Below are positions 4,296 through 63,818 of a stretch of 64,000 bases of DNA, in pieces. The translations under genes were made by a program, and so were the position numbers. The notes under the pieces are model-generated. The model was not told where the DNA came from. It did not search any database and was given only the letters and a program-made list of their open reading frames with translations. Source of the DNA: Leucoraja erinacea (lineage: Eukaryota); the NCBI RefSeq assembly GCF_028641065.1, contig NC_073379.1, positions 41,850,001 to 41,914,000 on the forward strand, given 5' to 3'. Numbering within the stretch: position 1 is the stretch's first letter; each line of letters starts with the position of its first letter.

Positions 4296-5825
4296 AAGAT
4301 AGACACAAAATGCTGGAGTAACTCAGCGGGACAGGCAGCATCTCTGGAGTTTCGGGTCGAGGTCCTTCTTCGGACCGATGTCAGGGGAGTGGGCGGTACA
4401 GAGATAAAATGTGGTCGGAGACAGTAAGACTGGTGGGAGAACTGGGAAGGGGGAGGGCATGGAAAGAGAGGGAAAGCAAGGGCTACTTGAAGCTAGAGAA
4501 ATCAATGCTCATACCACTGGGGTGTAAGCTGCCCAAGCGAAATATGAAGTGTTGTTCCTCCAATTTGTGCTGGGCCTCACTCTGACAATGGAGGACACCG
4601 AGGGCAGAAAGGTCTGTGTATGAATGGTAAGGAGAATTGAAGTGTCCAGCAACCAGGAGATCAGGTTGGTTCATGCGGGCTGAGCTGTTTTACGCGAAAT
4701 GATCACCCAGTCTGCGTTTGGTCTCGCCGATGTACAAGAGCCCACATCTTGAACAATGGAACCTCAGCTAAACCGGAATGGACTGTCTGAGTCCCTGACA
4801 GAGTCGAGGGAGGAGGTATTGTATCATCTACAGTTGCAGGGGAAGGTACCTGGGGAGGGGGTGGTTTGGGTGGGAAGGGATGAGTTAACCAGGGAGTTGC
4901 GGAGGGAACAGTCTCTGCGGAAGGTGGAAAGGGGTGGAGATGGGAATATGTGGCTAGTGGTGGGGTGCCATTGGAGGTGGCGGCAATTTTGGAGAATTAT
5001 GTATTGTGAACGACGGCTGATGAGGTGGAAGGCGAGGATTAGGGGGACCCTGTTGCAACTAAGGGAAGGGGGAACAAGGGTGGAGCTGCAGGGTACCATG
5101 GAGACATCAGTGAGGGCCTCACCTATGATGGGAGAGGGAAACCCCCGTTCCCTAAAGAATGAGGAAATCTCAGATGTTCTAGTATGGAACACCTCATCTT
5201 GGGCGCAGATGCGGCATAGAAAGAACAATTGGGAGTAGGGGGAATAGAGTCTTTGCAGGAAGCAGGGTGCTAATAAGTGTAGTTGACATAGTTGTGGGAG
5301 TCAGTGGGCTTGTAATGGATGTCAACAGCCTATTTCTTGTAATGGAGATTGTGAGATCAAGAAAGGGGAGGGAGGTGTTGGAGATGGTCCACGTAAATTT
5401 GAGTGCAGGATGAAAATTGATGGTGAAGTTGATGAAGTCCAGGAGTTCTGCACTGACCTTTCTGTCCTGGGCCTCCTCCATTGTCAGAGTGAGGCCCAGC
5501 ACTAATTGGAGGAACAACACCTCATATTTTGCTTGGGCAGCTATGGTGATATGAACATCGACTTCACTAACTTCAAGTAGCCCTTGCTTTCCCTCTCTCT
5601 CCATCCTCCATCCCCCCCCCCCCCCCCCCCCCCCACCAATCTTACTGTCTCCGACTACATTTTATCTCTGTGCTGCCCACTTCAGACTGATGTTAGGGGA
5701 GAAGGGTCTCGACATGAAACGTCACCCATTCCTTCTCTCCAGAGATGCTGCCTGTCCCACTGAGATACTCCAGCATCTATCTGTGTCCATCTCGATTTAA
5801 ACAAGCAGCTGCAGTTCTTTCCTAC
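4296..5825. mobile_element. Penelope-like element with inverted structure and perfect 14-bp TSD
   Basis: TSD GGATTTGCTAATGG at 4282-4295 and 5826-5839. Minus-strand RT/GIY-YIG fragments (NFHPALKFTWTIS, FFRERGFP, LEEQHFIFRLGSLHPSGM), a + strand copy of the C-terminus at ~5450-5580, and terminal modules at both ends in inverted orientation. Confidence 0.88.
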
Positions 5826-5856
5826 GGATTTGCTAATGGGATGAGTTGATAAGTGA

Positions 5857-6177
5857 AGGCCCTGTCCCACTTTCCCGAGTTACTCACGAAAACTCCCGAG
5901 TTTTCCCCTTGATTCGAACTCGGAGAATTATGGTAATAGCCATTCGTAGGTACTCCGGACTATTTTTTTTTACTTGTGGACATTTTTCAACATGGCGAAA
6001 AAACCGTCCCAACTTATCCGATGCCCCGAGTTCCTACAGTTAGCATTACGAGCCGCTACGAAACATCTACAGACTCCTACGGGCTCACTACTGGCATTAC
6101 CCGACATTCCCCAAGTTTGAATCAAGAGGAAAACTCGGGAGAGTTTGTGAGTAACTCGGGAAAGTGGGACAGGGCCT
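5857..6177. mobile_element. PIF/Harbinger-type MITE
   Basis: TIRs AGGCCCTGTCCCACTTTCCCGAGTTACTCAC / GTGAGTAACTCGGGAAAGTGGGACAGGGCCT flanked by TGA / TAA (3-bp TSD, one mismatch). Confidence 0.85.
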
Positions 6178-6544
6178 TAACATGATAGTGGTGGAAAAGG
6201 ATGAATGTATAAATTATTGAAATAGGACAAACAAAAAAAAATATATATAGATGTTTGCAATTGGGTGGAAGAAAATCTGTTTGGCAAGAAATGCCTGAAA
6301 CAAGTTTAGTTTGTACAGTGATTAAAGTAACACTTAAAATAGTTTGAGTTTTTCCAATTAGTTGGATCTTATGGATACTGAAAGTTGATACATATGTTTA
6401 GTGGAGTTTTTCCCAGCAAATGAAAATATTAAATTTTGCTAAATTCTAATAAAACAAGGAAACAAAAGAACTGTTCCTTATTAATGTTAGTTTCAATTAA
6501 ATGTATCACAATTATATATTCTGATTAAGTTATATCTGCTTAAA

Positions 6545-9981: not shown

Positions 9982-10094
9982 ATGGGCTCGGAGAGAATAC
10001 CCGTGTGAAAATACCAGAGATTGTAGCACTGCAAGTAGAAGATGTGCCTGGTGAAAATCCTCCATTTGAAGAACAAATAGTTTTGTCTATATAA
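9982..10094 (+). CDS. HEMGN: Hemogen probable last coding exon
   Basis: Strong acceptor ttcttcaattttattccAG (9980-9981), phase 1 compatible (G+AT=Asp). Encodes DGLGENTRVKIPEIVALQVEDVPGENPPFEEQIVLSI*, stop TAA 10092-10094. Called from splice signals, phase and acidic composition rather than recognised homology. Confidence 0.7.
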
Positions 10095-10114
10095 AATCGA
10101 CACCACATCTAAAA

Positions 10115-10368
10115 GTTAGACAAAAATGCTGGAGAAACTCAGCGGGTGAGGCAGCATCTATGGAGTGAAGGAAATAGGCAAAGTTTCGGGTCAAGACCCT
10201 TCTTCAGTCTGACCCTAAATGTTGCCAATTTCCTTCTTCAGTCTGAAGAAGTGTCTCGACCCGAAACGTTGCCTATTTCCTTCGCTCAATAGATGCTGCC
10301 TCGCCCGCTGAGTTTCTCCAGCATTTTGGTCTACCTTCGATTTTACAGCATCTGCAGTTCCTTCTTAA
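10115..10368. mobile_element. Fold-back non-autonomous PLE-terminus element with hammerhead-like motif
   Basis: Inverted arms ~10117-10207 and ~10243-10333; TSD ACACCACAT[C/T]TAAAA at 10100-10114 and 10369-10383. Confidence 0.85.
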
Positions 10369-10819
10369 ACACCACATTTAAAAAATCGTTTTGAGTTTTA
10401 TCTGACATTTGTTATTACACAGGGGAGATAACAATACCACTCACCCCCACAGGCCAAAACACTCATTATTAGAAGGTGCAAATTTGCATCCTGCCCTAAT
10501 ATATAGTTTGATACATCAGGGCTTCAATGGATGTTGACATCTTTCTTTAATGTGCCACTTTCTGGGAGGATGTGAAACCAAATCCTGACAATCTCCTGTT
10601 CTTCATGATGCATCGTGCAGAGAAAAACAAGAAATGGAAAAGGCAGTACTTTTAAAGTAAAAGAGAATTAACCCTATAGACAGGAATATTACAAGGAGTA
10701 CTACGGGTACAGACACAGGGCATTCAGGTTAACTGGTCTAAGCATGTTACCATTCCAGAAATACAAAGCAGCTACAGCCATTTAGTCCCTTGTGACTGGT
10801 CAGGTTTTCAATTGGATTA

Positions 10820-14889: not shown

Positions 14890-16870
14890 GATAGACACAA
14901 AATGTTAGAGTAACACAGCATCTCTGGAGAAAAGGATTAGGTGACATTTCAGTACAAGACCCTTCATCAGACTGACAGTCAGGGAGGGGGACACTAGAGG
15001 TATGGGAAGGTAAAGATTGTGGGCTGTCTGAGGAAAGGTGCAGCCCACATTGTTGACTGAGGACAAGGTGATAACGAGGGGATATGAGCAGTGAAACCAG
15101 CAAGACAACCAGGAAAGAGATGGAATGCAAGGGTTACTTGAAGTTGGAGAAATCAATGTTAATGTCGCTGGGGAGTAAGCTAGCCCAAGCAAAATATGAG
15201 GTGCTGTTCCTCCAAACAGATTGTGGCCTCTGACAGTGGAGGAGGCTCAGGACAGAAAGGTTGGTATGGGAGTGGGAAGGGGATTGGTACTGGGGAAACC
15301 ATGTAGGCCAAGGCGGACTGAGCATAGGTGTTCAGCAAAACGATCGCCCAGTCTACGCTTCGTCTCGCCAATATACAGGAGTACACAGCAAGAACACCGA
15401 ATAGAGTAGGTAGACAAAAGTGCTGGAGAACCTCAGCGAGTGCGGCAGCATCTACTGAGCGAAGGAAATGGGCAACGTTTCAGGCCGAAACCCTTCTTCA
15501 GACCAGGAGTTGAGGGGGGCTTTACCTCCCCCTTCAACTCCATTCAAGGACCCAAGCAGTCGTTCCAGGTGTGACAGAGGCTCATCTGCACCTCCTCCAA
15601 CCTCATCTATTGCATCCGCTGCTCTAGATGTCAGCAGATCTACATCGGTGAGACCAAGCGTAGCCTTGGCGATCGTTTCGCCGAACACCTCCTCTCGGTC
15701 CGCAATAACCAACCTGATCTCCCGGTGGCTCAGCACTTCCCCTCCCATTCTGAATCCGACCTTTCTGTCCTGGGCCTCCTCCATGGCCAAAGTGAGCACC
15801 ACAGGAAATTGGAGGAGCAGCACCTCATATTTCGCTTGGGCAGTTTATACCCCAGCAGCATGAACATTTACTTCTCCAATTTCCGGTTGCCCTTATTGTC
15901 TCCTCCTCTTCTCAGCTCTCCCTCAGCCCTCTGGCTCCTCCTCTTCCTTTCTTCTTCCTTCCCTCCCCCCACATCAGTCTGAAGAAGGGTTTCGGCCCGA
16001 AATGTTGCCAATTTCCTGCCTCACCCGCTGAGTTTCTCCAGCACTTTTGTCTACCTTCAATTTTCCAGCATCTGCAGTTCCTTCTTAAACACCGAATACA
16101 GTAGATTGGGTTGGAGGAAATGCGAGTGAACCTCTGCCTCACCTGAAAGGACTGTCGGGGTCCCTGAATAGCATTGAGTGAGGAGGTGTAGGGACAGGTG
16201 TTGCATCTCCTGCAGTTGCAGGGGAAAGTACCTGGGGAGGGGGTGATTTGGGTGGGGAGGGTTGGAAACCAGGGAGTTTCGGAGGGAACGGAAAGCGGTG
16301 GAGATGGGAAGATGTGACTGGTAGTGGGATCTCATTGCAGGTGAAAATGTCAGAGGTGCTGTATGCAAAGGCTGCTGGGGTGAAAGATGACGACAAGGGG
16401 GACTGCCCCTGGTGTGACTGGGGCAAAGGAAGCAAGTGCCGAGAACACACGTGTGAGAGCATTATCCATGATAAAAGTGGCGAACCCCTGTTCCCAAAAG
16501 AATGAGGACATCTCGGATGTTCCTGTATGTCCTGTGTTGGGCGCAGTTGCGGCAGAGATAGAGGAATTGGGAGTAGAGGATAGAATCTTTGCAGGGTGGG
16601 AAGAAACGTAGTCCCGATAGCTGTGGGACTCAGTAGTTTTGAAATAGTCGTCAGTTGATAGTCTATCTACTGTGATAGAGACAGTGAGATCAAGAACGGG
16701 GAGGGAGGTGTTGGAGATGGTCCAAGTGAATTTGAGAGCAGGATGGAAATTGGTAGTGAGGTTAATGAAGTTCATGAGTTCTTTCTGGGTACAGGAGGTA
16801 GCCTCGATGCAGTCATGAATGTAGCGGATATAGAGTTCCAGGATAAGGCCAGTGTATGCCTGGAGATGGA
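14890..16870 (-). mobile_element. Penelope-like element (host copy) split by a nested PLE
   Basis: Minus-strand NFINLTTNFHPALKFTWTIS, RQRFTRISSNPIYCIRC and LEEQHLIFCLG; terminal module at ~14890-14975; reading continues across the 15410-16087 insertion. Confidence 0.82.
15410..16087 (+). mobile_element. Nested Penelope-like element (inverted 5' module + GIY-YIG fragment + 3' module)
   Basis: TSD AACACCGAATA[G/C]AGTAG at 15393-15409 and 16088-16104; GIY-YIG coding DNA (atctattgcatccgctgc...tacatcggtgagaccaagcg = IYCIRC..YIGETKR). Confidence 0.88.
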
Positions 16871-17533
16871 GACGCTACCACTTTTGAATGGCCTGTGTCC
16901 ATTTTTAAGTTATGTCCTCTTGTTTTGGGATGTATTGGAGAATATAATTTACTTTAGTTAGAGATACAGCATGGAAACAGGCCCTTGGACCCACCAAGTC
17001 TACACTAACCATCTAGCACCCATTAACATAGATTCTCTCTAATCTACCTTTGCAATTCTTTTAATCAACTTGAACATTTCAATTATGTGAAAGGATGAAC
17101 TTTCAAATGTTCACATTCTCCTAATACAATCACTGTGCATTGAAATGAGTTAGCGGCAGGTGCACATGGTGTTAATTGCACTTTAGAATTGTTAACAGTA
17201 CCATATGGTTCTTGCTGCTATCACACATGAAGCACCGTCAGTGCTCCTCTGTTACCAGAGCAACAACCATGAACCATTGGGACTATCTTTATCAGTATTT
17301 CACAGGGAGGCTCCAATTGCACAAAAGATTTGAAAGTTTACAGTACATTCTTCTTGTTTTTAAGTTACCCCACTTAGTTTACACAAGGGATTCACAAGCA
17401 ATTGCCAAAACAGAGAATTCAAGTTCCAAAATATCAAAAGTTGATATCAAATGAAAGTAGCTGTTGACATTTTATTGCATATAGATATGAATCTTATTTT
17501 GTCTTGTTAAAATGCAACTTTTAATTTCATCGC

Positions 17534-17625
17534 CTGAAGAAGGGTCACAACCCGAAACGTCACCTGTCCATTTCCTCTTAAGATGCTACTGACGCGTTGA
17601 GTACTTCCAGGACTTTGTGTTTTGG
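17534..17625 (+). mobile_element. PLE terminal module with intact hammerhead-like core
   Basis: CTGAAGA A GGGT CACA ACCC GAAA CGTC at 17534-17561. Confidence 0.7.
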
Positions 17626-17639
17626 TCTGAATTTCAAAA

Positions 17640-19040
17640 ATGATATCACCTACTTTAGTATCATCTGTAAACGTACTAATCATGTTTTGTACGTTCTCAT
17701 CCAAATAATTAATATAGATGACAAACACCAATCAGCCCAGTACCAATTCTTCAGGCACACACACACAGGCCTCCACTATGAAATACAATCTTCCACCACC
17801 ACCCTCTGTTCCTTACCATGAATCCAATTCTGTATCCAGTTTGCCTGCTCTCCCATATCATCTAACCTTCTAGAGCAACCTACTATGCGGAACTTTAGTC
17901 CATATACACTATGTCTACAGCCCTGCCATTGTTAACATTCTTGGATACTTCAAAAAACTCAATCAAATTTATGAGACATTATCTTCCATGTGCAAAATCA
18001 TGCTGATAATCCCTAATCAAACTATGTCTATCGAAATGCATGTCGACCTTAACCTCAGAATCCTTGAGTAATGTTTCTACACCAAATTCAGAATTACTGG
18101 TCCACATCTATCCAGATTTTCCTTTGCAGCCCTTTTTAAATAGAGACACAACATTATCCATCCTGTAATCATCCAGCACCTCACTCATGTCCAAAGATTC
18201 ATATATCTAAGCCAAGACTCCTGCAATTTTTTCCGTAATTTCCCACAATGCACTTGGATATATCTGATCAGGCCTGGGAATTCTCTCATCATACGTCTTG
18301 GAATATCTAGCGCATCTTTGACTGTAATACAGACTATCCTCAAGACATCTCCACTACTGCCCCAAGTTCCCTAGTCCTCATGTCTTCCTCTGCAGAGGAG
18401 TAATATTCATTGAGGACATTGCCCAATCTCCTGAGGTTCCATGCATAGATAAGGCAAATGGGATGCTGGCCATTATTAAGTGCAGTATAAGAGCACAGAA
18501 GTCATGGTACGACTTTATAAGACGTTGGTTATACCACGCATTCATACAATAAGTATTGTGTGCAATTCTGGTTGCCACAGTATAGAACAGATGTGATTGC
18601 TTCAGCAAAGTACACGACTGATTTACCCTGATGTTGCCAGGTATGGAACAGGCCTCCTCTCTGATTCCCAACAGCTCTCAATTCCCAATCATCCAAAAAC
18701 CTTTTTATTTCCTCTTTAAGTAATCCCCATGTTCTAGTCTCCGCAGCTTTCCATGATAGATAATTCCAAAGATTCACGACCCTCTGTGAGAGGTTTTAAA
18801 TTACTTCCACAATTTTGTAACTAACTACATTCCCTCATTCAATATTCTCACATGTGGATAACTTCTACCCCTTCAAGGATCATGCCCCTTCAAGGATCTT
18901 GAATGCTTCATTAAGATCACCCCTATTCTCCTAAACCCCAAAGAACATGAATCTAATTTCTTTAGCTGCCTTTAACAGGATCACAACCCAACTCCAGCAG
19001 TTATCCTGGCATATCTCTTTTGAACTGCTCTAATGCCAAT
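17640..19040. mobile_element. Cluster of decayed CR1 fragments
   Basis: Minus-strand VIYINYLDENVQNMISTFTDDTKVG; + strand fragment ~18455-18640; minus-strand 3' fragment ~18670-19040 that resumes after the Tc1 element (~20600-21060). Confidence 0.65.
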
Positions 19041-19041
19041 A

Positions 19042-25489: not shown

Positions 25490-25845
25490 CTTCTTAGATG
25501 GTCTTTGGGATCGATCACTATTTTCTTTGTCATGCTGACATTGAGGGAAAGGTTGTTGTCTTGACACGAGTTTCTCAATTTCCTTCCTGTACTCTATCCC
25601 TTCATTATTTAATATCCGGCCCACTATAGTGGTGTTGTCTGCAAATTTGTAAAATTGAGTTGGATTTGTATCTGACTACACAGTCATGGTTGTATAAGGA
25701 ATACAAAAATTGCATTATTGCAGATTATCATAGAGAATGATTTGTCACCTATCCTCACTGACTGTGGTCTGTTGGTCTGGAACTTAAGGATCCAGTTGCA
25801 GAAATTTCTGCACCAAGTCGCTGCTCCAGGTTACATGAGTTTGGA
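25490..25845 (-). mobile_element. Rex1/Babar-like RT fragment
   Basis: Reverse complement of gtggtgttgtctgcaaattt reads KFADNTT (FADD-type motif). Confidence 0.5.
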
Positions 25846-26760
25846 ACTCAATTTTACTTGGACCATCTCCGACACCTCCAACTCCTTTCTTGATCTCAGT
25901 CTCCATCACAGGAAATAGTCTATCATCTGATGTCTATTACAAACCCACAGCTATCTCGACTACACTTCATCCCACCCTGCTTCTATCCCTTTCTTCCAAT
26001 TCCTCCATCTATGCCACATCTGCGCATAAGATGAAGTATTCTATACCAGGACATCCAAGATGTACTCATTCTTTAGGGAACGGGGGTTCCCCTCTCCCAT
26101 CATAGACGAGGCCCTCGTTCATGTCTCCTCAGTACCCTGCAGTTCCGCCCTTACTCCCCCTTACCCTAGTCGCAACAGACAGAGTCCCCCTAACCTTTCA
26201 CCCCATCACCTATCATATACAACACATAATTCCACCACTAGCCACATTTTCCCATCTCCATCGCTTTCTGCCTTCTGCAGAGACCGTTCCCTCCGCAACT
26301 CCCTGGTTAACTCATCCCTTCCCACCCAAACTACCCCCACCCCATGTACCTTCCCCTGCAACCGCAGAGGATGCAACACCTGTCCGTATACCTCCTCTCT
26401 TGACTCTGTCCAGGGATCCCGACAGTCCTTTCAGGTTGGGCAGAAGGTAACTTGCACCTCCTCCAAACTCATCTACTGTATCCGTTGTTCAAAATGTGGA
26501 CCCTTATACATCGGGGAGACCAAACACAGACTGTCAGCCCGCCTGAACCTACCCGATCTCCCGGTTGCTAAATACTTTCATTCTCCTTCTCATTCCCACA
26601 CAGACCTTTCTGTCCTAGGTCTCCTCCATTGCCAGAGTGAGGCTGAACACAAATTGGAGGAACAGCATCTCATATTTTGCTTGGGCAGCTTACAGCCAGT
26701 GATATGAATATTGATTTCTCTCACCTCTAATTCCATCTCCCTCTCTCTCTCTCCCTACCC
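25846..26760 (+). mobile_element. Penelope-like element, RT thumb + GIY-YIG endonuclease fragment
   Basis: ORF 26060-26707: FFRERGFP...FPCNRRGCNTC...IYCIRCSKCGPLYIGETK...LEEQHLIFCLGSLQP. Confidence 0.9.
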
Positions 26761-29492: not shown

Positions 29493-29626
29493 TGTTTAAG
29501 AAGGAACTGCAGATGCTGGAAAATCGAAGGTACACAAAAATGCTGGAGAAACTCAGCGGGTGCAGCAGCATCTATCGAGCGAAGGAAATAGGCAACGTTT
29601 TGGGCCGAAACCCTTCTTCAGACTGA
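29493..29626 (-). mobile_element. Solo PLE terminal module
   Basis: tgtttaagaaggaactgcagatgctgg...gaaacccttcttcagactg; hammerhead-like core with GAAA mutated to AAAA. Confidence 0.8.
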
Positions 29627-34097: not shown

Positions 34098-34111
34098 GTG
34101 AGCGACCGTGG

Positions 34112-42001: not shown

Positions 42002-42367
42002 GTAAGTTGGCTTTAATTGTATAATTGCATATGTGTATGACCTGCATCTTTTAACTTTTGTGAGTGATAATTAAGTTCAATGTTGCAATATGAATTAAAA
42101 TCACTTCCAATTTCTCTAGAGAATTGTTGTTAAGTTCTTTTATTCTTTTGGCTGATTACTCAATTGTGACAAAAGATTAAAAATATTGAGTTTGTTAAAT
42201 TGGCTGGAAATGTTGGCTGTCAGCAAGTTCATTGTATCCAACAGTTTCACTTTGTGCAATCAATTGATTGATTTAATTACTTGTGTAGGAAGGAACTGCA
42301 AAAGGGTCTCGACCCAAAACGTCACCCATTCCTTCTCTCCAGAGATGCTGCTTGTCGTGCTGAGTTA

Positions 42368-43129
42368 TGGGCCTGTCCCACTTAGGTGATTTTTCAGGCG
42401 ACTGCCGACGACAGTCAAATCGTAGCAGGTCACTGAAAAACCGGCGACTGGAATGTCAGAGTGAAACACACACGCATACATACACAAATAGCATCCTTCA
42501 CCAGCCAGTTATGCAGGCGGGGGATAGGGCAAGTGGGGTGAGCGCTGTCTGAGTGAAATTCACGCGGTGAAAGCCAATGTGATACAGACACGATGAACAG
42601 GAAGGTTGGCGCTGTAATTAAGACAGTTAAAGCACAGTGTATAGGAAAGGTCACACAAGTCCTTTAAAAGGGGGGGGGGGGGAAGAAGGAGTGGAGACAA
42701 CTTTTAAGAAGGCAGAGAAAAGAATTGTTCGGCACGGACTTGTAGGGCCGAGATGGCCTGTTTCCGTGCTGTAATTGTTATATGCGGCAGTGCAGCTCGG
42801 CGGACACTAACATTACCGGTCGGTTATCCTTGGTTCTGAAACCTACAGTTTAAGTTTTATTTTTCCAATGAGCCAACAAAATTCACTGGTCAGCACCGGC
42901 GACAACCAACGACCTCCTGGCAACCCACTACCACTGCACCTACTTCACGAGAATTCTTGCTCTGCATGGCATCAAAATTCTGGTCGCCGCGGTGACCAGA
43001 ATGAAGCCGCGACTAGTTAACAGAATGCCGGAACTGCTCACCATCATGCAGGTGAATCCCCAGCAAACTCCGGAGAACATGTGGCGACCTCGTAGTCGCC
43101 TAAAAAGTTGCGTAAGTGGGACAGGCCCA
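42368..43129. mobile_element. PIF/Harbinger-type MITE inserted in a PLE module
   Basis: TIR TGGGCCTGTCCCACTTA / TAAGTGGGACAGGCCCA, TTA TSD (42365-42367, 43130-43132); host module reads tgctgagTTA|ctccagc; contains a CR1 3' tail at ~42720-42784. Confidence 0.92.
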
Positions 43130-44899
43130 TTACTCCAGCTTTTTGTGCCTATCTTTGATATAATTACTTTATAGGTGGACGTAATGACAGATACTTTGCA
43201 TTTCATGCATGTTTGATTTATGCGTTTTTAATATAAAGCACGTTCTTTTAATACCAAAGCTTGATTTATGCGCTGGTATTTTAGGAATAACACGTTCAAA
43301 TTTATTGCTGACAGCATAGTCATGTGTATATTTAATTGACTGTTTATTTAACTATGTGCTGCTTTTCAAGCACGTAATCCCTGCATAAAATGCGTGGTGC
43401 CTGTACAGCAGTAAAACGTTGGCATCAACCAAATTGTCTCTTGGGTTTTCCTTTTTTTTTAATATATCTGATCTTTTCTATTAGGCTTTCCTTTAGTGTA
43501 AAGACTACCAGGTTATGATTCATGCATATCCTGTTACCCTAAAAAGGAGTTGGTGGGCTGCCTTCCATTGTGCTTCATGGTAATTATTACTGCAGTTATA
43601 TTGCCCATCGCGCAAATTTGATAGAATGCAGTAGAGTTATTTATAATAGCATTTATAATAGCATCTCCAGTGTGTTGGTTTCCTTACCTGACATTGCTGA
43701 ACCAGTAGATACAAGGAACTACAGATGCTCATTTACAAAAATCCACAAAGTGCTGGAGTAACTCAGTGGGTCAGGCAGCATCGACATTGTGCTGGAACTT
43801 TGTCTTTGTATAAAGCGCTTATTTTTATTGTTTTAATGAAAAATCAGCAGCCATGTCACCTTATGTGTCATGTTACTATATTTAGCTAATTTAATTTCAT
43901 AACATAGTAATAGGATTGCAAATCACTCCCTCAGAGTTTCCATTCTTGCATTCTCGCCTCAATAATAATTGAAAGTGTACTGTGATCCACAACTCTCCTG
44001 AATTCCCCACTGGACTGATCAATGACAAGCTCTTATTTCTAACTTCCAGTTTTGAATTTCCAAACAGAAAATATTTGATGCATTATGTCTTTTTTTTATC
44101 TTGTGAAACTCTAGAGGGACAACCGCCATTCTTATTCACCCTGTATTTTATAGAGGAAATAACTGCAACAAATTCAACCTTAATGAATGCAAATTGACAG
44201 ATTCTATCTTTTTGAGTTCTATTTATGGAGACAAGAAATCTGTCTAGGACTGCAGGTGTTTAATAAAGCATCTCTACTTTTCAGGTGTACTTGTCAAGAA
44301 ATGAACTCTGCTGATGTTTGCTTCTTATGGTTCATTAACCTACATCGTTATTTTTGGTCGTTTGTCCATCTGCTGCTATATTCCAATGAGCAATGCTGCA
44401 GAAAATAAACAAATCCATTATATTAAATTAGCATTGTCAATCAGATTGTGTAGGGAATGTTTGGAGTTGACAGCAAGGCAGCTAGGCTACTCCACTGTGA
44501 ATTTAACTTTCATATTTAAAGGTTTGAATGTTAACTTTCAGCAAGATAAGAAAAATTTTGAATTATGTTTCGGTTTTAATGCTCTGCACTCCCAGTAGAG
44601 TAGAATGCCGAAAGTAGTAATAAGAACAGCACCACTGCACTGTTTCTTTATCTCAGACCAGTATTCCTTTTTGGTGTTGTTCCCAGCTAGGAGTATCGAA
44701 TTACTGAATATACCTTTTGACTAAAGATCAGAATATAAACAAATTAGGAGAGTCTCTGACTCTCAATCCCATCCTGAAATTCTCCTGGAGAGCAGTGGAA
44801 CCGTGGAAAATCCTTTCTTAGTTTCTTGTCCTGTCAGAAATCTTTCTATAAAGTGATATTGGGAATGGTAAATGTACATTTTAAAACCAGTTACCCAGT

Positions 44900-47271: not shown

Positions 47272-47622
47272 AGTGAGTGGTATGAATATTGATTTCTCTC
47301 ATTTCAGGTGGCACCGGCATTCCCTCTTTCGCTATCCCTTCCCCACCCGAGTTGCACTAGCTTCTTATTTTCACCCTACAAACAGCCTGTTTCCTTTATC
47401 ATTGTTACTTTTTTTGCATATCTTTCATTCATTGTTCTTTATCTCTCCACATCACCGTCTATATCTCTCGTCTCCCTTATCCCTAACCAGTCTGAAGAAG
47501 GGTCTCGACCTGAAACGTCATCCATTCTTTCTCTCCAGAGATGCTGCCTGTTCAGCTGAGATACTCCAGCTTTTTGTGTCTATCTTCGGTTTAAACCAGC
47601 ATCTGCAGTTCCTTCTTACACA
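47272..47622 (+). mobile_element. PLE 3' end with complete terminal module
   Basis: SGMNIDFSHF (end of PLE ORF), pyrimidine-rich UTR, core CTGAAGA A GGGT CTCG ACCT GAAA CGTC (47492-47519), tail ending ccttcttacaca. Confidence 0.85.
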
Positions 47623-48035
47623 ACATAGCGACTCCAGCAGGTTAAAATTTCAATGAAAATGTACCGGTTAAGGAATCTGAAAAACAAGCCTATAAATCTT
47701 TTGAAAATTGCTAATGGCCATAAAGGAACAGTGAGAGGTTGGGAGATATTAACATTTTTGATGGGAAATATTAGAAATTTTGTATCTCGCATGCTGAAAC
47801 CACAGGTATTTGGCACCACTGAGATTCATTACTTGTTCCTACTTGTCTTAAAGTGGTGAAAAGCCACAACCTTGTACAGGTGCAGATAGTATAGTGAGGT
47901 TTCTCCATAGAAAGTTCCAGAATACCGACATAACAGTGATGTAATTACAAGTCCGGTTGATCTGGTAATTGTTGGGGGACTTGGATTTAAGACTATTTTC
48001 CAACCTAGCTCACCTGTTGAAGCTGTATCAACAAC

Positions 48036-48505: not shown

Positions 48506-48794
48506 CTGGCACAATATTTTAGTTCAATATTTTCAATTTAAAAAAAAAAAAATAGATCAAATTGATTCATTCTCTGAATTTTAAATGTTGTGGATAACCA
48601 TGTTAAAAATACTAAATGAATGTGAAATTTTACATGTGTAAGAAGGAACAGCAGATGCTGGTTTAAACCGAAGATAGACACAAAAAGCTGGAGTAACTCA
48701 GCGGGACAGGCAGCATCCCTGGAGATGTTACATGTTAGATGTTACATGAATTTTTACATGTTTGATGTGTAACATATTTCTAAACCTTTCTTAG

Positions 48795-56401: not shown

Positions 56402-57509
56402 TATTACACTAATGGACATTGAGCTGCAGCAAGTAAGATTTTGGGGTTCCATTCCCAGTGCATATGACAAATAAACACTCTTAATCTCAGCAGGAAGAGG
56501 ATTCCACTGGCAATATACCATTCATCAATAGTTTACCAACCTGTTCCTTGGTTATGTCTCAGATCAATATTTAGTGGCCTAGTCATTATTTCATTGTTAA
56601 TTTGGTGCATGTTTGCTGTGTGTAAATTAGCTACTCTCCTGTGTTTCAAAACTTTAATTTTAAAAAAAACTAATTGCTGTGAGCTGCTCTGTGATGCCCT
56701 GAGTTGTTAATATACTGTATGGTCGGGTCATTTACGGCATGTGGCTGCTATTAATATGTCAAAGTGATCCACTTAATCACATGGTTTCTTTGCTAAGGAT
56801 CAAATGGCTAAGAAATATGTCAGAAGTCATAGTTTGGTGTTGTTTTTAATGTCAAAATATGGCCACATAGAAAAGGGAGGAAATGATGGACTAAGACTAA
56901 GTAGTGTATTACATATTGCAGGAAGCACAATAGGGAAAATGTTTCAACTATGATTTATAAGAAAAATGCAAAATAGTATTATATTACATGAATTGCTGCC
57001 TTTTCTAGCAACCATGTAAACTGAGGAATTTTAGAATCCAACAAAAGACATTTAAAAATTAAACTGCTGGAGGAACTTGAGCGTCAGGCAGTATCTGTGG
57101 AGGGAAGGGACAGAGGACATCTCAGCTTTGGATCCTTTAGGATCGTCAACAATTTGATCAAGGAAAAGAACAATAAAGTATAAGTGAAAAACATAAGAGC
57201 CTCCTGAAGCATGTGAAAAGGAGAAGGCTGGCGTTGGAGCGGCAGGGACAGTGGTTCCTTAGTGGGAAATTATATAATGAGAAACAAGGAAATGATTGAA
57301 GAATTAAACAAATATTGAGTGTCTTCACTGAGGAAAACACAGAAAGCTGCCCAGAAATAATGGTGAAACAAAGATCCAGTGAAACGAGGAAATGAAAGCA
57401 GTGAGTTAATAATGAAATAATGCCAATGTTTATGAGCCTGTTAGATCTAACGACTTGCATCCCACAGTTTTGAAAGATATTGCACCATTAGTGCCCATTC
57501 TTTAGGTTG

Positions 57510-58280
57510 TCATAGTCATATAGCATGGACACTGCCCCATCTATATTAGTCCCACCTGCCGGGTGTTTGGCCCATGCCCCTCTAGACCTATCCTATCCAT
57601 GTACATGTCCAAATATTTTTTAAACGCAATAGTACCTGCCTCATTTGCCTTGTCTGACAGCTTTCTGCCATATACCTACCACCCTTTGCGTAAAAAAAGT
57701 TACTCCTCCTCTGATCAGTCAGAAGCAGGGTTTCGGCCCAAAACGTTGCCTATTTCCTTCGCTCCATAGATGCTGCTGCACCCACTGAGTTTCTCCAGCA
57801 CTTTTGTCTACCTTCAATTTTCCAGCATCTGCAGTTCCTTCTTAAACACTGCTCCTATTAAATCATTCCCATCACTCAAACCTATGTCCTCTGGTTCTTG
57901 ATTCCCCTACTATGGGTAAAAGACTTATGCATTTACCCTATCTCTTCCTCCCATGATCCTATATACCTCTATAAGACCACCCCTCATCCTCTACGCTCCA
58001 AGGTATAAAGTTCTTGTCTGCTCCACCTCTCCCTATAACTGAGGCCCTCAAGTCCTGGCAACATCATGAATCTTCTCTGCACCCTTTCCAACTTGCATCT
58101 TTCCTATAACAGGGTGAACAAAACCAAACACAATACTCTAAATGTGGACTCACCAATGTCTTGTACAACTGTAACATGACTTCCCAACTTCCATACTCAG
58201 TACTCTGGGTGATGATGGCAATGTGCCAAAAGCCTTCTTGACCACCCTATCTACCTGTGGTGACACTTTCAAGGAAAGGG
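57510..58280 (-). mobile_element. CR1 3' fragment interrupted by a + strand PLE module (~57710-57849)
   Basis: CR1 reverse-complement sequence resumes after cttcttaaacac. Confidence 0.75.
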
Positions 58281-58350
58281 CCAATGTCCTATGTTCTGGT
58301 AATCGATCTTTAAACACCTTTATTTCGCTCTCTCACTCATTCCTTTACTT

Positions 58351-58482
58351 TGTTTAAGAAAGAACTGCAGGTGTTGGAAAAATCAAAGGTAGACAAAAAT
58401 GCTGGAGAAACTCAACGGGTGAGGCAGCATCTATGGAGCGAAGGAATAGGTGGCATTTCGGGTCAAGACCCTTCTTCAGACT
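58351..58482 (-). mobile_element. Solo PLE terminal module
   Basis: Minus strand ctgaagaagggtcttgacccgaaatgcc; full tail. Confidence 0.8.
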
Positions 58483-58930
58483 CATTAACTTTAATTATTT
58501 TTAAAATTTACCTTTTTGCTGAAGACCTTCGTTGTCGATCCTAAAATTTTCTTATATGAATTGTCAACTTTTGTATGATATTAATCCTGTGAAATACTTT
58601 GATAAATTAGATAAATTGCTAAATCTGTTTCATGAGCCATTGGTATTTTTTTCCCTAGTAACCTTTTGGTGTATAACTATCCAGATCAACAGCAGTTTAA
58701 CATAACAATTGTTCTTCAGTGTGAATTTCAAACTCACTGCTCTGAAAAATAATATTCTCATCTACTCAGAACAACCAAGATTTGCACAGCCTATTTTATT
58801 TAAAAGGCAAACACTCAAATTACATGCCATCTTCACAGAGATCTGTGACTTCCCGCCACCTCTAATACATCCCCCCCCCCCATGTATATTTAATTGCTTT
58901 ATCTGTGGAGGATAAGGTCATGCTCAGCTT

Positions 58931-60612: not shown

Positions 60613-62484
60613 CACCATACTGCTCCCACTCTGACCTTTATGTCTGTGGCCTCCCGCAGTGGTACATCATGAGCCAACACACCTTATCTTTCACATTTGC
60701 AGCCTTTCTTTTACGTTTACTTGTATACTCTGGTAGGATGCATATATCGTAATCGTGCCAGATGATCTAATGTTACCAACACATTACACAAACAAAGAAA
60801 CATGGCATAGTTTTTCACCTATCAGGGAACCACAGGGAATTTGTATTATTCCACCCACTGCCTTCCCCCAATTATCTGCAGAGACTCAAACCGGAATGTC
60901 AACTATCCCTCTGCTTCTGTAAAAGCTGCTCCACCTGCTGATTTTCTACAGCAGTTTGTATTTTGCTTTCTGCTTGACTAATATTTTTTCATGACTGATT
61001 TTTTTGATGTGATGAAAGGTTTCATCAGTGGCATATTAACTGTTTCACTATTTTACCATTACTATGTCAAATTCTTGGAACTCTCTAACCAAACGATAGT
61101 GGGAGCTCTTCACCCTGCACAGACCAAAATGGTACATTGGTTTACTATTACTTTCTGAAGGGCAGACTGGAAAGGTAAACATATATATTGGCTTCACCTG
61201 CATTGCCATCAGCCTTAATTTAAAAAAATGAATACCACTATTTGTTTGGTCATAAATAAAACTATCAACGTTTAAGAAAACATTTGGACAGGTACATGGA
61301 TAGGACAGGTTTAGAGAGGTATGAGCCAAATGCAGGGAGGTGGGACTAGTGTAGATGGGACATGTTGGTAAGTGTGGGCAAGTTTAGCCGAAGGGCCTCT
61401 TTCCACCCTGTATGACACTGACTCTATGACTCTAACTATTTGCTTAACAAAGCACTTCCCAAAGTCCAGAGTAATGCTAAAAGTAACATAGGCTGACAAT
61501 TGTTCCCATCTTACTTGACTCCACTGAAATTAATTATCTGTTTGAACCGTATGCAAATTGGAAGCTGCTTTTCCTATAATACAACCGTGTCCTTTCACCA
61601 AAAAAAATAGCTACACTTCAAATAGCAACAACCATAATATCAATTTACATACATCTTTTATAAGGCAAAACACACTACAATGCTTCACTGGAGTGTTATC
61701 CACCAAATAAAGATGCTAATAAAGGAATATTAAAGGATTGGATTAAAAGCTAGGTCCAAAGCTAGCCGTTTACGTGGGAAGAGAGGGAAGGAATTTCACA
61801 GCATTAGTATTTGTTCCTGTCGACATGGCTGACAATGGTGGGTCAATTAAATACTGGAATGATCAATAAATCAGATTTAGAGGAGATGGATGAGGGCTTT
61901 AAGACTGAGGAGATTAGAGAGATATTAAAAAGTATTTGAAAACAAAGATAAAAATTGGAACATTGAGACATTGCTTAAGCAGGATCCAAAGTAAAACAAG
62001 CACAAGGCATGATGGTGAACAGAAGCTGTTGCAAAATGACATCACTGCAATAGAGAGTTGGATGATCCCAAATTTGTAAAGGATAGGATGAGGGAGGTTG
62101 GTTTAGAGTGTATTGGAACAGTCAAGTATAAAAGCATGAAAGTTATGGATGAGAGCTTCAGCAACAGATTATCTGAGATGGGTATAGAATCAGGAGATGT
62201 TAAATATAAAGATGGTTGATCTTGGTGATGATTTGAAGCTTGATCTTAGGGTCAAATAGGACAATAGAGATAAACATGCAGGTTGGTTTGAGTGAGGGAT
62301 GAACTCGGTGTCTGGGAAACAACATTGACAGCTTTGGTCTTACAATATTTAATAGAAAACAGTTTGTGCCTATCTAGTCCCGTATGTTGGGCAGTTTAAC
62401 AATTTAAATACAGTGGAAGGGTCAAGAATCTGTACTGAGGTATACGTAGGTGTGCATTTAGTTCATTCTGTTCTGTATAATGTT

Positions 62485-63110
62485 TAGAAACATAGAAACG
62501 TAGAAATTAGGTGCAGGAGTAGGCCATTCGGCCCTTCGAGCCTGCACCGCCATTTAATATGATCATGGCTGATCATCCAACTCAGTATCCTGTACCTGCC
62601 TTCTCTCCCTAGCCCCTGACCCCTTTAGCCACAAGGGCCACATCTAACTCCCTCTTAAATATAGCCAATGAACTGGCCTCAACTACCTTCTGTGACAGAG
62701 AATTCCAGAGATTCACCACTCTCTGTGTGAAAAATGTGTTTCTCATCTCGGTCTTAAAAGATTTCCCCCTTATCCTTAAACTGTGACCCCTTGTTCTGGA
62801 CTTCCCCAACATCGGGAACAATCTTCCTGCATCTAGCCTGTCCAACCCCTTAAGAATTTTGTAAGTTTCTATAAGATCCCCCCTCAATCTTCTAAATTCT
62901 AGCTAGTACAAGCCGAGTCTATCCAGTCTTTTTTCATATGAAAATCCTGACATCCCTGGAATCAGTCTGGTGAATCTTCTCTGTACTCCATCTATGGCAA
63001 GAATGTCTTTCCTCAGATTAGGAGACCAAAACTGTACGCAATACAGGTGTGGTCTCACCAAGACCCTGTACAACTGCAGTAGTACCTCCCTGCTCCTATA
63101 CTCAAATCCT
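62485..63110 (-). mobile_element. CR1 3' fragment
   Basis: GFEYRSREVLLQLYRVLVRPHL...MRGDLIETYKILKG; (TTTCTATG)n tail. Confidence 0.92.
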
Positions 63111-63624
63111 AGTTTTATATAATTTAGGTTTATATAAGGATGTGAACGATGCTTTTTATTGGAACATTTGAATTTGACATGAAAATAAGAAATTGAGACC
63201 AAAGTTGAAACCAAACTCAAAATCATCATGATTTTTTTTCATGTAAAAAAGATGCTTTATAATGCATTGATGTTTCATTTTTTTTACATCAGAGAAGGCT
63301 GTTTTCACTATTAAATAATTCGACGTGATTGAAACTTATGGAGACATTGGAAAATGGCCCTCATGATTATATCTTTTTAACCAGGTACATTTCGGTTTAT
63401 CAACAGCCATTTTATCCATCTTTTAACTTTCCTTGTCTTACCGTAGCACACCTCTTTATAGTTACATAATTATAGATTATTTATAAAATTTGTCTGAGTA
63501 ATGGGAATTAAAATGATGTTACAAACAGTTTTGGTTTGGGATTTTCTTAAATTAAAATAAAAAATAGGCAAAGTATTGTGCAACAGTCAAACCTTATGAA
63601 TCTGAGTTTTCCTGACAAAGTATC

Positions 63625-63818
63625 AGACAGCGTCTCTGGAGAAAAGGAATAGTTGACGTTTCGGATGTGAACCCTTCTTCAGACTGACTGAATACTAAGA
63701 TGGGTTAGACCCGAAACGACACATATTTATTTTCTCCAAAAACGATGCCTGACTCGCTGAGTTTCTTCAGCATGTCGTGTCTACGGTATAAACCAGCATC
63801 CGCAGTTCCTTCTTACAT
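63625..63818. mobile_element. Fold-back PLE-terminus element
   Basis: Minus core CTGAAGA A GGGT TCAC ATCC GAAA CGTC (63655-63682) facing a + arm gacccgaaacgac...cagttccttcttaca. Confidence 0.72.

What the first reader, a model, noticed from the sequence alone, without database searches (positions are those of the whole stretch)
4350..63720. Window-wide family of ~130-bp modules carrying a minimal hammerhead-ribozyme-like core
Seen: about 20 copies of a module with consensus cagt-CTGAAGA-A-GGGT-YTCG-RCCC-GAAA-CGT(C/T)-(A/G)CC. Best copies are 10243-10270(+), 15474-15501(-), 15979-16006(+), 17534-17561(+), 47492-47519(+) and 63655-63682(-); degenerate ones include ~4350(-), 5700(+), 14942(-), 28013(+), 29594(-), 32142(+), 34630(+), 36616(+), 42302(+), 57720(+) and 58452(-). 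The order CUGANGA / helix II / GAAA / NUH is that of a type I hammerhead. Helix II stays paired across variants (GGGU-CUCG-ACCC, GGGU-UUCG-GCCC, GGGU-CACA-ACCC, GGGU-UCAC-AUCC). Helix III is reduced to the loopless palindrome ACGU, so it could only form as a dimer of two motifs. Established: Penelope-like elements carry minimal hammerheads with short palindromic helix III in their pLTRs, and an extra A after A9 is tolerated in a viroid (CChMVd) hammerhead. Inference: this is a very high-copy, possibly dimer-dependent self-cleaving module that also moves as a solo, protein-free unit. Caveat: helix I is only 2-3 bp (GU with AC/GC), so activity is uncertain.
Basis: partly seen in the sequence, partly recalled or inferred. 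Interest (0 to 1): 0.85.

Follow-up and report, generated by a model that had tools for sequence, protein, structure and literature searches.

The report
Penelope retrotransposon tails with hammerhead motif
The repeated ~140-base module is the tail end of a Penelope-like jumping gene of a skate, carrying that group's already published minimal hammerhead-ribozyme motif, and nothing found here shows that it actually cuts itself.

Summary
The core motif occurs 14 times against 0.03 expected, and a profile finds 27 module copies covering 3,277 bp, 5% of the window.

The module is not a free-standing ribozyme family. It is the 3' terminal segment of a Penelope-like element (PLE). It lies 92-166 nt after remnants of an RT plus C-terminal GIY-YIG ORF. 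It shows the published PLE insertion signatures: 5' truncation, an optional ~35-nt tail and head-to-head inverted copies.

The motif matches the "min-HHR" of Cervera and de la Pena 2014: an extra nucleotide after A9, a G10.1-C11.1 pair and a loopless palindromic helix III. Helix I, however, is only 0-3 bp.

Nothing supports cleavage:
- No Rfam hammerhead match, even at E<=10.
- No compensatory changes.
- The core is no better conserved than the rest across copies.
- Competing folds are 2.4-8.6 kcal/mol more stable.
- 0 of 27 copies start at the predicted cut.
- Four raw RNA runs show no pile-up of molecule ends.

This scan has already noted the same family on other DNA of this genome. It is ordinary, and a new member of a known kind.

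The parts
4251..4379 (-). PLE tail module, long copy continuous with the ORF remnant upstream; core decayed (3 mismatches); ends at the short 3' end
5683..5831 (+). PLE tail module, inverted partner of the 4251-5514(-) copy; core split by a ~10-nt insertion
10078..10215 (-). Left (inverted) arm of a fold-back insertion; 24-nt motif perfect, but G16.2 is mutated; short 3' end
10238..10375 (+). Right arm of the fold-back insertion, with tail. The insertion 10116-10369 is flanked by a 15-nt target duplication (10101-10115 and 10370-10384, 13 of 15 identical, read by eye)
14890..14976 (-). PLE tail module after ORF remnant 15414>15137; short 3' end; helix II decayed
15366..15505 (-). PLE tail module; motif complete but with G-U at 10.1-11.1; the only copy with a 3-bp helix I
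15973..16097 (+). PLE tail module 92 nt after ORF remnant 15440-15886; 16-nt internal deletion; C15.2 changed to U
17530..17669 (+). Solo module of a divergent subfamily; motif fully intact, loop 2 different, helix I 0 bp
28003..28028 (+). Fragment: PLE 3' UTR plus the start of the motif, cut inside helix II
29487..29628 (-). Solo module with tail; G12 changed to A
32067..32146 (-). Inverted arm of a head-to-head pair; internal deletion removes helix II
32135..32276 (+). Forward arm of the head-to-head pair, with tail; helix II decayed
32379..32523 (-). Solo module with tail; core decayed
34630..34756 (+). 5'-truncated module starting inside helix II (model column 20)
34997..35105 (-). Old, divergent 5'-truncated module
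36150..36267 (-). 5'-truncated module (model column 25), with tail
36616..36705 (+). Divergent module, short 3' end
37782..37892 (+). Old, divergent module; GAAA box lost
42293..42426 (+). Module whose 5' end abuts a ~19-nt inverted piece of the tail; core decayed; 3' part replaced
43713..43782 (-). 5'-truncated module (model column 59)
47485..47628 (+). Long copy: the end of the PLE ORF (frame from 47273) runs into the module; motif complete with G-U at 10.1-11.1; with tail
48628..48724 (-). 5'-truncated module (model column 52), with tail
57061..57137 (-). Old, divergent module, short 3' end
57713..57851 (+). Module with tail; core decayed (3 mismatches)
58344..58486 (-). Solo module with tail; 24-nt motif perfect, but U16.1 changed to C
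60878..60969 (+). Old, divergent module
63546..63689 (-). Arm of a head-to-head pair; motif intact with G10.1-C11.1; helix I 1 bp
63697..63823 (+). Other arm of the head-to-head pair, with tail; core disrupted by an insertion
4486..5514 (-). PLE ORF remnant (C-terminal part of the RT through the end of the GIY-YIG endonuclease); the motif core begins 112 nt after its end
5401..5577 (+). PLE endonuclease C-terminal remnant, inverted copy
15137..15414 (-). PLE endonuclease remnant upstream of module 14890-14976
15440..15886 (+). PLE endonuclease remnant upstream of module 15973-16097
15942..16865 (-). PLE RT C-terminal to endonuclease N-terminal remnant
25754..26728 (+). PLE RT C-terminal plus GIY-YIG remnant (query ORF 26060-26707); no recognisable module downstream

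Best explanation
The module is the 3' terminal segment (the pseudo-LTR part) of a family of Penelope-like retrotransposons of a skate.

A full unit ends as follows: RT/GIY-YIG ORF, stop, about 90-170 nt of C/T-rich 3' UTR, the minimal hammerhead motif, about 65 nt of body, then an optional ~35-nt tail.

The PLE reverse transcriptase starts cDNA inside the RNA at one of two sites, which gives the short and long 3' ends. It copies toward the 5' end and often stops early, or the two DNA ends are both used. The genome therefore fills with 5'-truncated tails, tail-only ('solo') copies and head-to-head inverted pairs. These are non-autonomous by-products made by PLE protein in trans. They are not a separate ribozyme-driven element.

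The hammerhead-like core is the published PLE 'min-HHR', inherited with the tail. In this family helix I is almost absent, and the purine-rich core can pair with a downstream pyrimidine tract. Efficient self-cleavage is therefore unlikely, and most genomic copies are decayed.

Shown: copy number, PLE linkage, 3' end types, inverted pairs, motif anatomy, absence of RNA end pile-ups.

Inferred from papers: the internal RT start and the use of both strands as the cause of tails and inverted pairs.
For: Copy number: the motif has 14 hits against 0.03 expected, and there are 27 module copies.

PLE linkage:
- The ORF at 26060-26707 has 2,533 relatives at E<=1e-3. In proteins of 800-950 aa the match sits at the C-terminus.
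- 5 of the 6 relatives scanned carry RVT_1 followed by GIY-YIG hits. GIY-YIG passes Pfam's cut-off in P0056 and RVT_1 passes it in P0048.
- The Atlas places the ORF among eukaryotic GIY-YIG clusters at 0.96.
- tblastn maps six ORF remnants in the window. Four end 92-166 nt before a module on the same strand, and a fifth long copy is at 47273-47628.

Insertion signatures:
- Two 3' end types about 35 nt apart.
- Three head-to-head pairs with gaps of -12 to 22 bp.
- A 15-nt target duplication around 10116-10369.

Papers:
- Passages of Craig et al. 2021 (PMC8557442) list exactly these features for PLEs: 5' truncation, an inverted 5' copy, a 30-40-bp tail, and an HHR in the pLTR.
- Passages of Frangieh et al. 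[quoted passage not shown]
- The main text of Cervera and de la Pena 2014 (PMC4209133) defines the min-HHR with the same odd features.
Against: - No full-length element or 5' pLTR lies in the window. All ORF remnants start after about residue 450 of ~900, so 'pLTR' is inferred from the 3' end only.
- Pfam does not itself call GIY-YIG or RVT_1 in the window's decayed PLE ORF pieces. The assignment rests on their full-length relatives.
- No DNA from other species could be fetched, so homology of the motif to published PLE hammerheads is by position and anatomy, not by alignment.
- One divergent subfamily copy (17530+) keeps 26 of 28 motif positions while 45 of 99 other positions differ from subfamily A (Fisher p=1e-4). 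This hints that the motif is under selection in master copies, so it may have a function.
Confidence: 0.85

Rival explanations
1. One reading: the module is an active, dimer-dependent self-cleaving hammerhead that also spreads on its own as a protein-free unit.
For: - Both boxes, the extra A, G10.1-C11.1 and the ACGU palindrome are in the subfamily consensus.
- Published PLE min-HHRs cleave weakly as dimers (PMC4209133).
- The Anolis PLE hammerhead cleaves in vitro, with C3/G8 mutant controls (PMC11167929).
- The motif is much better kept than the rest in the divergent 17530 copy.
- Module RNA is abundant, so two motifs could meet in trans.
Against: - Helix I is 0-3 bp.
- No Rfam hammerhead hit at E<=10.
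- 0 of 4 helix II pairs are compensatory, and 452-492 of 500 shuffles score at least as high.
- Core identity is 0.775 against 0.798 for the body.
- The hammerhead fold is 2.4-8.6 kcal/mol above the minimum-energy fold in 4 of 4 copies tested.
- No head-to-tail pair lies closer than 389 bp.
- 0 of 27 copies begin at the predicted cut.
- No place where a fifth of the depth begins or ends in 4 RNA runs at depths of about 1,000-1,400 per strand direction (summed depths of several thousand at single places in tables 3-4).
- Solo copies have target duplications and 3' ends of PLE type, so they need PLE protein.
Confidence: 0.1
2. The conserved 5' part of the module is kept for a non-cleavage role. 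It may mark the start of the PLE transcript (an internal promoter with an initiator-like TCAGTC just before the core) and/or be bound by the RT. In that case tail-only copies are full-length copies of a short RNA that runs from the pLTR start site to the internal RT start site.
For: - Among copies with non-PLE upstream flanks, 4 solos (17530+, 29628-, 32523-, 58486-) and the 6 arms of 3 head-to-head pairs begin within about 1-5 nt of the core. Nine others are truncated at scattered deeper points.
- In D. virilis Penelope the pLTR holds the transcription start and a LINE-like internal promoter, and the 3' pLTR alone can drive transcription (PMC2377424 passages; PMC8557442).
- Hammerhead mutants do not affect insertion in vitro (PMC11167929).
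- The match to the initiator consensus is my own recollection, not a tool result.
Against: - No pile-up of read starts at the module start in 4 runs. These are oligo-dT or single-cell libraries that would lose a ~140-nt RNA without a poly(A) tail.
- The start lies in a 7-nt palindrome (CAGTCTG) that could equally cause template switching.
- The profile's left edge was set by me 10 nt before the core, so alignment starts of long copies at columns 3-8 are not evidence.
- In D. virilis the hammerhead lies more than 100 nt after the start site.
Confidence: 0.2
3. Chance resemblance: a retroposon tail that happens to contain CUGANGA, a hairpin and GAAA.
For: - The box pattern alone (CTGANGA, 5-30 nt, GAAAC) is expected about once per window by chance, and 2 of the 9 hits are outside modules.
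- There is no covariation.
- There is no Rfam hit.
Against: - The motif sits in the element class where, according to PMC4209133 and PMC8557442, hammerheads are universal.
- It shares four non-obvious published features: the extra nucleotide, G10.1-C11.1, a palindromic 15.2-16.2, and its position in the terminal repeat upstream of the RT start sites.
Confidence: 0.04
4. The palindromic units (for example 10116-10369) are MITE-like DNA transposons, and the single modules are their halves.
For: Three tight inverted pairs. One has a target duplication.
Against: - The arms are unequal: one arm has the tail and the other has not.
- The junctions differ between pairs.
- The same sequence follows a PLE ORF in 5 copies.
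- 15 nt is long for a DNA-transposon target duplication.
- Inverted 5' copies are a described PLE feature.
Confidence: 0.02

Closest known systems
Minimal hammerhead (min-HHR) of metazoan Penelope-like elements (Cervera and de la Pena 2014, PMC4209133)
   Same: - Type I order.
- No helix III loop.
- Palindromic 15.2-16.2, so that only two motifs together can build helix III.
- An unpaired nucleotide between A9 and 10.1.
- A G10.1-C11.1 pair.
- Located in the PLE terminal repeat.
- Thousands of dispersed single motifs from truncated PLEs, some in opposite strands 100-700 bp apart.
   Different: Helix II here is 4 bp (6-8 bp in the paper's families). Helix I is 0-3 bp (4-5 bp in the paper). No within-window covariation was seen, whereas the paper reports families 'full of covariations'.
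Drosophila virilis Penelope hammerhead variant (same paper)
   Same: A helix I of only 2 bp. A bulged nucleotide at the 5' end of helix II. Located in the pLTR.
   Different: The fly motif has a 6-bp helix II with a bulge and a small palindromic helix III insertion. It lies after a 75-nt intron, more than 100 nt from the transcription start (PMC2377424).
Poseidon PLE of Anolis carolinensis (Frangieh et al. 2024, PMC11167929)
   Same: The hammerhead lies several tens of nucleotides upstream of two internal RT start sites that bound a 30-40-nt tail: about 85-92 nt after the cut there (from that paper's numbers), about 65 nt (short end) and 100 nt (long end) here. RNA-seq there also showed no reads beginning or ending at the hammerhead site.
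   Different: In Anolis the ORF starts inside the hammerhead. Here the motif has no ATG and lies 92-166 nt after the stop of the preceding ORF.
Non-LTR retrozymes (Cervera and de la Pena 2020, PMC7229834, search listing only; Li et al. 2026 preprint, abstract and passages)
   Same: Short non-autonomous units with type I hammerheads, proposed to derive from PLE pLTRs. Monomer copies are dispersed.
   Different: Retrozymes are defined by tandem repeats that yield circular RNAs. No tandem array is present here.
Retroposons headed by HDV-like ribozymes
   Same: A very abundant short retroposon carrying a ribozyme motif near its 5' end.
   Different: Those begin exactly at the predicted cut, with RNA starts reported there. 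Here the predicted cut is about 30 nt inside the module, and no copy or RNA end maps to it.

Membership tests
Penelope-like element (canonical EN+ PLE) | A single ORF with a reverse transcriptase followed by a C-terminal GIY-YIG endonuclease | tested here: met
   The window ORF pieces align to the C-terminal half of 800-950-aa proteins. 5 of 6 of these scanned carry RVT_1 and then GIY-YIG. Pfam does not call the decayed window pieces themselves.
Penelope-like element (canonical EN+ PLE) | Insertion signatures: strong 5' truncation, an optional 30-40-bp tail, and an adjacent inverted 5'-truncated copy | tested here: met
   Alignment starts are spread from column 3 to 59. There are two 3' end types about 35 nt apart and three head-to-head pairs. 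The features are as listed in PMC8557442.
Penelope-like element (canonical EN+ PLE) | pLTR: the same segment repeated at both ends of a full-length unit | not testable with these tools
PLE minimal hammerhead (min-HHR) | Boxes CUGANGA and GAAA, and a U-H cleavage dinucleotide, in type I order | tested here: met
   Present in the consensus. Among 15 aligned copies, CUGANGA is intact in 11, GAAA in 12 and UH in 13.
PLE minimal hammerhead (min-HHR) | [quoted passage not shown] | tested here: met
   An A in 15 of 15 copies.
PLE minimal hammerhead (min-HHR) | G10.1-C11.1 closing pair of helix II | tested here: met
   10 of 15 copies. The losses are transitions to G-U or decay.
PLE minimal hammerhead (min-HHR) | No helix III loop; palindromic 15.2-16.2 | tested here: met
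   ACGU in 9 of 15 copies and in the consensus.
PLE minimal hammerhead (min-HHR) | Helix I of 4-5 bp (2 bp in the D. virilis variant) | tested here: not met
   0-3 contiguous pairs. 7 of 15 copies have 2 or more and 1 of 15 has 3. The outer two positions pair in 2 of 14 and 3 of 14 copies.
PLE minimal hammerhead (min-HHR) | Families with covariation and compensatory changes in the helices | tested here: inconclusive
   0 of 4 helix II pairs have a change on both sides, and the shuffles are as good. There are only 15 copies from about 3 subfamilies, and no other species could be fetched.
PLE minimal hammerhead (min-HHR) | Self-cleavage, at least as a dimer | not testable with these tools
   Indirect evidence only: no end pile-up in 4 RNA runs, 0 of 27 copies start at the cut, and the hammerhead fold is less stable than alternatives.
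Rfam hammerhead families | A match to any curated hammerhead covariance model | tested here: not met
   0 matches at gathering scores. None of the 10 matches at E<=10 is a hammerhead.
Non-LTR retrozyme | Head-to-tail tandem repeats of the hammerhead unit | tested here: not met
   The closest same-strand neighbours are 389 bp apart, and there is no array.
Ribozyme-terminated retroposon (element begins at the cut site) | The 5' end of copies coincides with the predicted cleavage site | tested here: not met
   The predicted cut is at profile column 38/39. No alignment start lies between columns 26 and 51.

The most novel reading that the evidence does not exclude
The tail-only copies are not random truncations. 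They are full copies of a short RNA that starts 1-5 nt before the hammerhead core (at an initiator-like site inside the 3' pLTR) and ends at the internal RT start site.

The PLE tail would then be a self-transcribing, SINE-like parasite of its own parent. Its hammerhead core, lacking any helix I in cis, would be kept for a role other than cis-cleavage: promoter or RT recognition, or pairing of two RNAs through ACGU.
Probability: 0.15. Interest if true: 0.45.

Novelty: new member of a known kind. Interest (0 to 1): 0.15.

Why it matters
It matters little beyond annotation. It explains about 5% of this window, and by the scan's other notes much of this genome, as Penelope-like tails. It also warns that hammerhead-like cores in such tails are inherited motifs, not evidence of active ribozymes.

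Two small points may interest specialists in retroelements:
- This family pares helix I down to 0-3 bp.
- Tail-only and head-to-head copies share a sharp 5' boundary 1-5 nt before the core, not at the predicted cut. This bears on the open question of what the PLE hammerhead is for.

Tried and rejected
**Rfam.** At gathering scores and at E<=10 there was no hammerhead and no HDV-like or other ribozyme. The only hits were sub-threshold miRNA and lncRNA models elsewhere.

**Pfam on seven window ORFs.** Nothing was found for the PLE pieces.

**Exact-match search for target duplications.** It was uninformative. One duplication was read by eye.

**Relatives from other species.**
- A metagenome scan with a conserved 17-nt block of the module gave 120 stretches, of which 80 loci were returned. 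None holds the module by nhmmer, so they are chance matches.
- A viral-contig scan with a PLE protein alignment found no relative.

**RNA folding.** Minimum-energy z-scores were -0.90 to +1.24 for 5 stretches, so the module is not unusually structured. The consensus fold pairs part of the core with the tail, but there are too few changes to judge it.

**Considered by eye and rejected.**
- A type III hammerhead made from the two arms of a fold-back. The arms are fully complementary, so a plain long hairpin would win.
- An HDV-like fold starting at the module's 5' end. There is no P2, and P1 would be separated from P3 by 15 nt.
- A downstream-promoter-element match to GAAACGUC. The spacing is off by 3.

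**Literature.**
- Searches for a description of this skate or shark family found nothing relevant. 'hammerhead ribozyme' + Penelope + shark gave 1 paper, where the word shark only describes the shape. Penelope + Leucoraja gave 1 paper, on a lungfish transcriptome. The library lacks most subscription journals.
- Lunse et al. (RNA Biol.; cited as reference 134 in PMC6765202) was not held. I saw only its citation and a review's summary.
- Supplementary figures of PMC4209133, which list vertebrate min-HHR families, were not opened. They may already include cartilaginous fishes.

Full report
**Observation**

CTGAAGANGGGTNNNNRCCCGAAA with up to 3 mismatches has 14 matches. The mean over 100 dinucleotide-preserving shuffles was 0.03, and none of them reached 14.

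A profile built from those 14 copies with flanks finds 30 hits at E<0.01. Of these, 27 are at E<1e-5: 13 on + and 14 on -, covering 3,277 bp or 5.1% of the window.

About ten further copies were missed, including a perfect one at 10184-10207(-).

**What the module is**

Five copies (4379-, 5683+, 14976-, 15973+, 47485+) share homologous sequence upstream of the module. tblastn with database proteins maps six ORF remnants in the window. Four of them end 92-166 nt before the motif core of a module on the same strand.

The best-preserved remnant is the ORF at 26060-26707.
- It has 2,533 relatives at E<=1e-3 among 1.84 billion representatives. In proteins of 800-950 aa the match lies at the C-terminus.
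- Of 6 relatives scanned, 5 carry RVT_1 followed by GIY-YIG hits. GIY-YIG passes Pfam's cut-off in P0056 and RVT_1 passes it in P0048. The others are below cut-off, and the sixth, P0011 (416 aa), has no hit.
- The Atlas search puts the ORF among eukaryotic GIY-YIG clusters at 0.96.
- The closest named relatives are uncharacterized proteins of Hypanus sabinus and Leucoraja erinacea.

RT followed by a C-terminal GIY-YIG endonuclease is the architecture of canonical Penelope-like elements (abstract of PMC8557442). Pfam did not call the decayed window pieces themselves.

**Insertion anatomy**

The aligned copies show two 3' ends. The short end is about 65 nt after the motif. The long end carries about 35 more nucleotides.

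5' ends are spread. Profile starts are at columns 3-8 in 18 copies and at 13, 14, 16, 17, 20, 20, 25, 52 and 59 in the other nine.

Three pairs lie head to head with gaps of -12, 7 and 22 bp. No same-strand pair is closer than 389 bp.

The fold-back at 10116-10369 has one arm without the tail and one arm with it. It is flanked by a 15-nt duplication, 13 of 15 identical, read by eye.

These are the features that passages of Craig et al. 2021 list for PLEs: heavy 5' truncation, an adjacent inverted 5'-truncated copy, a 30-40-bp tail at one end, and hammerheads in the pLTR. Passages of Frangieh et al. [quoted passage not shown] That explains both end types and, by inference, the inverted pairs.

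**The hammerhead motif**

I read the main text of Cervera and de la Pena 2014 through the start of its Methods. It defines a 'min-HHR' for metazoan PLEs with these features:
- no helix III loop;
- a palindromic 15.2-16.2, so that only two motifs together form helix III;
- a conserved nucleotide between 9 and 10.1;
- a conserved G10.1-C11.1 pair;
- helix I of 4-5 bp (2 bp in D. virilis);
- helix II of 6-8 bp;
- very low activity in vitro, and only as dimers.

I aligned 15 window copies: the 14 plus 14976-. The other 12 lack the motif or most of it. Counts among the 15:

| Feature | Copies with it |
|---|---|
| Extra A after A9 | 15 of 15 |
| CUGANGA box | 11 |
| GAAA box | 12 |
| UH dinucleotide | 13 |
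| G10.1-C11.1 | 10 |
| ACGU | 9 |
| Four helix II pairs | 10 |
| Everything together | 4 |
| Everything plus G10.1-C11.1 | 2 (17530+, 63689-) |

Helix I has 0-3 contiguous pairs. So this is the published motif class, with a canonical 4-bp helix II and an extremely short helix I.

**Tests bearing on activity**

- **Rfam.** There were no matches at gathering scores and no hammerhead among the 10 matches at E<=10.
- **Covariation.** Helix II is 85% paired, but 0 of 4 pairs change on both sides. Of 500 shuffles, 452-492 reach the observed measures. Only the two inner helix I pairs form.
- **Conservation across copies.** Mean identity to consensus is 0.775 for the boxes, 0.804 for the helix II stem, 0.798 for the body and 0.626 for the tail. 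Many losses are CpG transitions, as expected for dead copies.
- **Conservation between subfamily consensuses.** A against B differs at 3 of 28 motif positions and 7 of 62 body positions. A against the divergent copy 17530+ differs at 2 of 28 motif positions, both in loop 2, against 20 of 61 in the body and 25 of 38 in the tail. Fisher's test on 2/28 against 45/99 gives p=1e-4. This is one copy with an uncertain tail alignment, but it is the one result that speaks for constraint on the motif.
- **Thermodynamics.** In 4 of 4 copies the hammerhead-competent fold (-0.4 to -4.5 kcal/mol) is 2.4-8.6 kcal/mol weaker than the minimum-energy fold. In 2 of the 4 (47485+, 58486-) the purines of the core pair with the downstream pyrimidine tract.

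**RNA evidence**

No older run is on record as RNA. Four raw-read RNA runs of 2026 carry the same species label: two bulk oligo-dT runs and two single-cell runs. I laid them on 10060-16059, which holds five modules, at 88% likeness.

- Bin-mean depth at the modules of the 10060-10459 stretch is about 1,000-1,400 per strand direction in the bulk runs, with summed depths of several thousand at single places in tables 3-4. It is zero or nearly zero in the unique flank at 10460-10659.
- Of the laid reads, 79-94% run on into sequence unlike this locus. The signal is therefore the family as a whole, mostly embedded in longer transcripts.
- The table of places where 5 or more molecules, and a fifth of the local depth, begin or end is empty. 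This holds at the predicted cuts (10270/10271, 10180/10179, 15474/15473, 16006/16007) and at the module starts.
- Loose ends cluster at the module edges. Those at 10238 have a partly C-rich consensus like the PLE 3' UTR. Those at 10371/10372 have unrelated flanks. Another cluster sits at 10269, where subfamily A reads diverge from this subfamily B copy.
- The threshold and the poly(A)-based libraries would miss a minor cleaved fraction or a short RNA without a poly(A) tail. This is absence of support, not proof of inactivity. Frangieh et al. report the same negative result for Anolis.

**An unexplained detail**

Some copies have an upstream flank that is clearly not PLE. Among these, four solos (17530+, 29628-, 32523-, 58486-) and the six arms of the three head-to-head pairs begin within about 1-5 nt of the core. 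That point lies in a 7-nt palindrome (CAGTCTG).

No copy begins at the predicted cut, which is profile column 38/39. An earlier follow-up of this scan made the same remark on other DNA.

Two readings remain open.
- **An RNA 5' end there.** In D. virilis the pLTR holds the start site and a LINE-like internal promoter, and the 3' pLTR alone can drive transcription. Tail-only copies would then be complete copies of a short pLTR transcript.
- **Template switching at the palindrome.** The read data do not show starts there, but they could not have captured such a short RNA.

**Comparison and novelty**

By position, anatomy and context this is a member of the published PLE min-HHR class.

It is not a retrozyme, because there are no tandem arrays. 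It is not a ribozyme-terminated retroposon, because no copy begins at the predicted cut.

I found no paper in the held library that describes this family in skates or sharks. A 2026 preprint reports PLE-linked retrozymes in one chondrichthyan without naming it in the passages I saw. Supplementary files that might list such families were not opened.

This scan has already flagged the same family many times in this genome. Two earlier follow-ups reached the same identification. I rate it a new member of a known kind, of low interest.

Noticed in passing
window 10116-10369 and 1644-10094: The fold-back PLE tail insertion lies just after what another first-reader note calls the hemogen stop codon. 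In the RNA runs used, the unique flank 10460-10659 has depth of zero or nearly zero, so this locus gave no test of the module inside a host 3' UTR.
   Followed up: partly
window 8341-9644; also 22641-23102(-) and 32711-33097(-): There is a LINE-type reverse transcriptase ORF (RVT_1, E=1.3e-27), followed by an ORF whose C-terminal motif recurs in two other ORFs. This is a second, unrelated retrotransposon family.
   Followed up: partly
window 48824-49588 (+): A 254-aa ORF begins with a motif (…GTPVLDIKPYIPDYD…) that I recall from TrmO/TsaA-type tRNA methyltransferases. If it is a TRMO exon next to hemogen, that would match the human neighbourhood as I recall it. Neither point was tested.
   Followed up: no
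window 54385-54810 (+): The ORF looks like a Tc1/mariner transposase fragment. This is from recollection of the motif and was not scanned.
   Followed up: no
window 40393-40507 and 40647-40803: There are long GC-rich hairpins with sub-threshold matches to miRNA models (best MIR533, 45.4 bits against a gathering score of 80). They lie in a region with overlapping low-complexity ORFs and are probably palindromic repeats.
   Followed up: no
window 33700-35900: This is the GC-richest stretch of the window: 0.52 in the 32001-36000 bin. It has overlapping Arg/Pro/Gly-rich ORFs on both strands and may be a CpG island or a first exon.
   Followed up: no
modules, e.g. 47488-47628: The purine run of the hammerhead core (GAAGAAGG) is complementary to a pyrimidine tract about 30 nt downstream and to another in the tail. 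The consensus fold therefore pairs the module's 5' end with its tail. There are too few changes to judge whether this is selected.
   Followed up: partly
window 10060-10459 and 15460-15859: In the two single-cell runs, reads over a + module (10260-10459) and over a + PLE ORF remnant (15460-15659) lie about 3:1 on the - strand. The two bulk runs are 1:1. The kit chemistry is unknown, so sense and antisense cannot be assigned.
   Followed up: no
window 26729-26900: The PLE remnant that ends at 26728 is followed by the usual C/T-rich 3' UTR, but there is no recognisable motif or module. The tail seems lost or replaced.
   Followed up: partly
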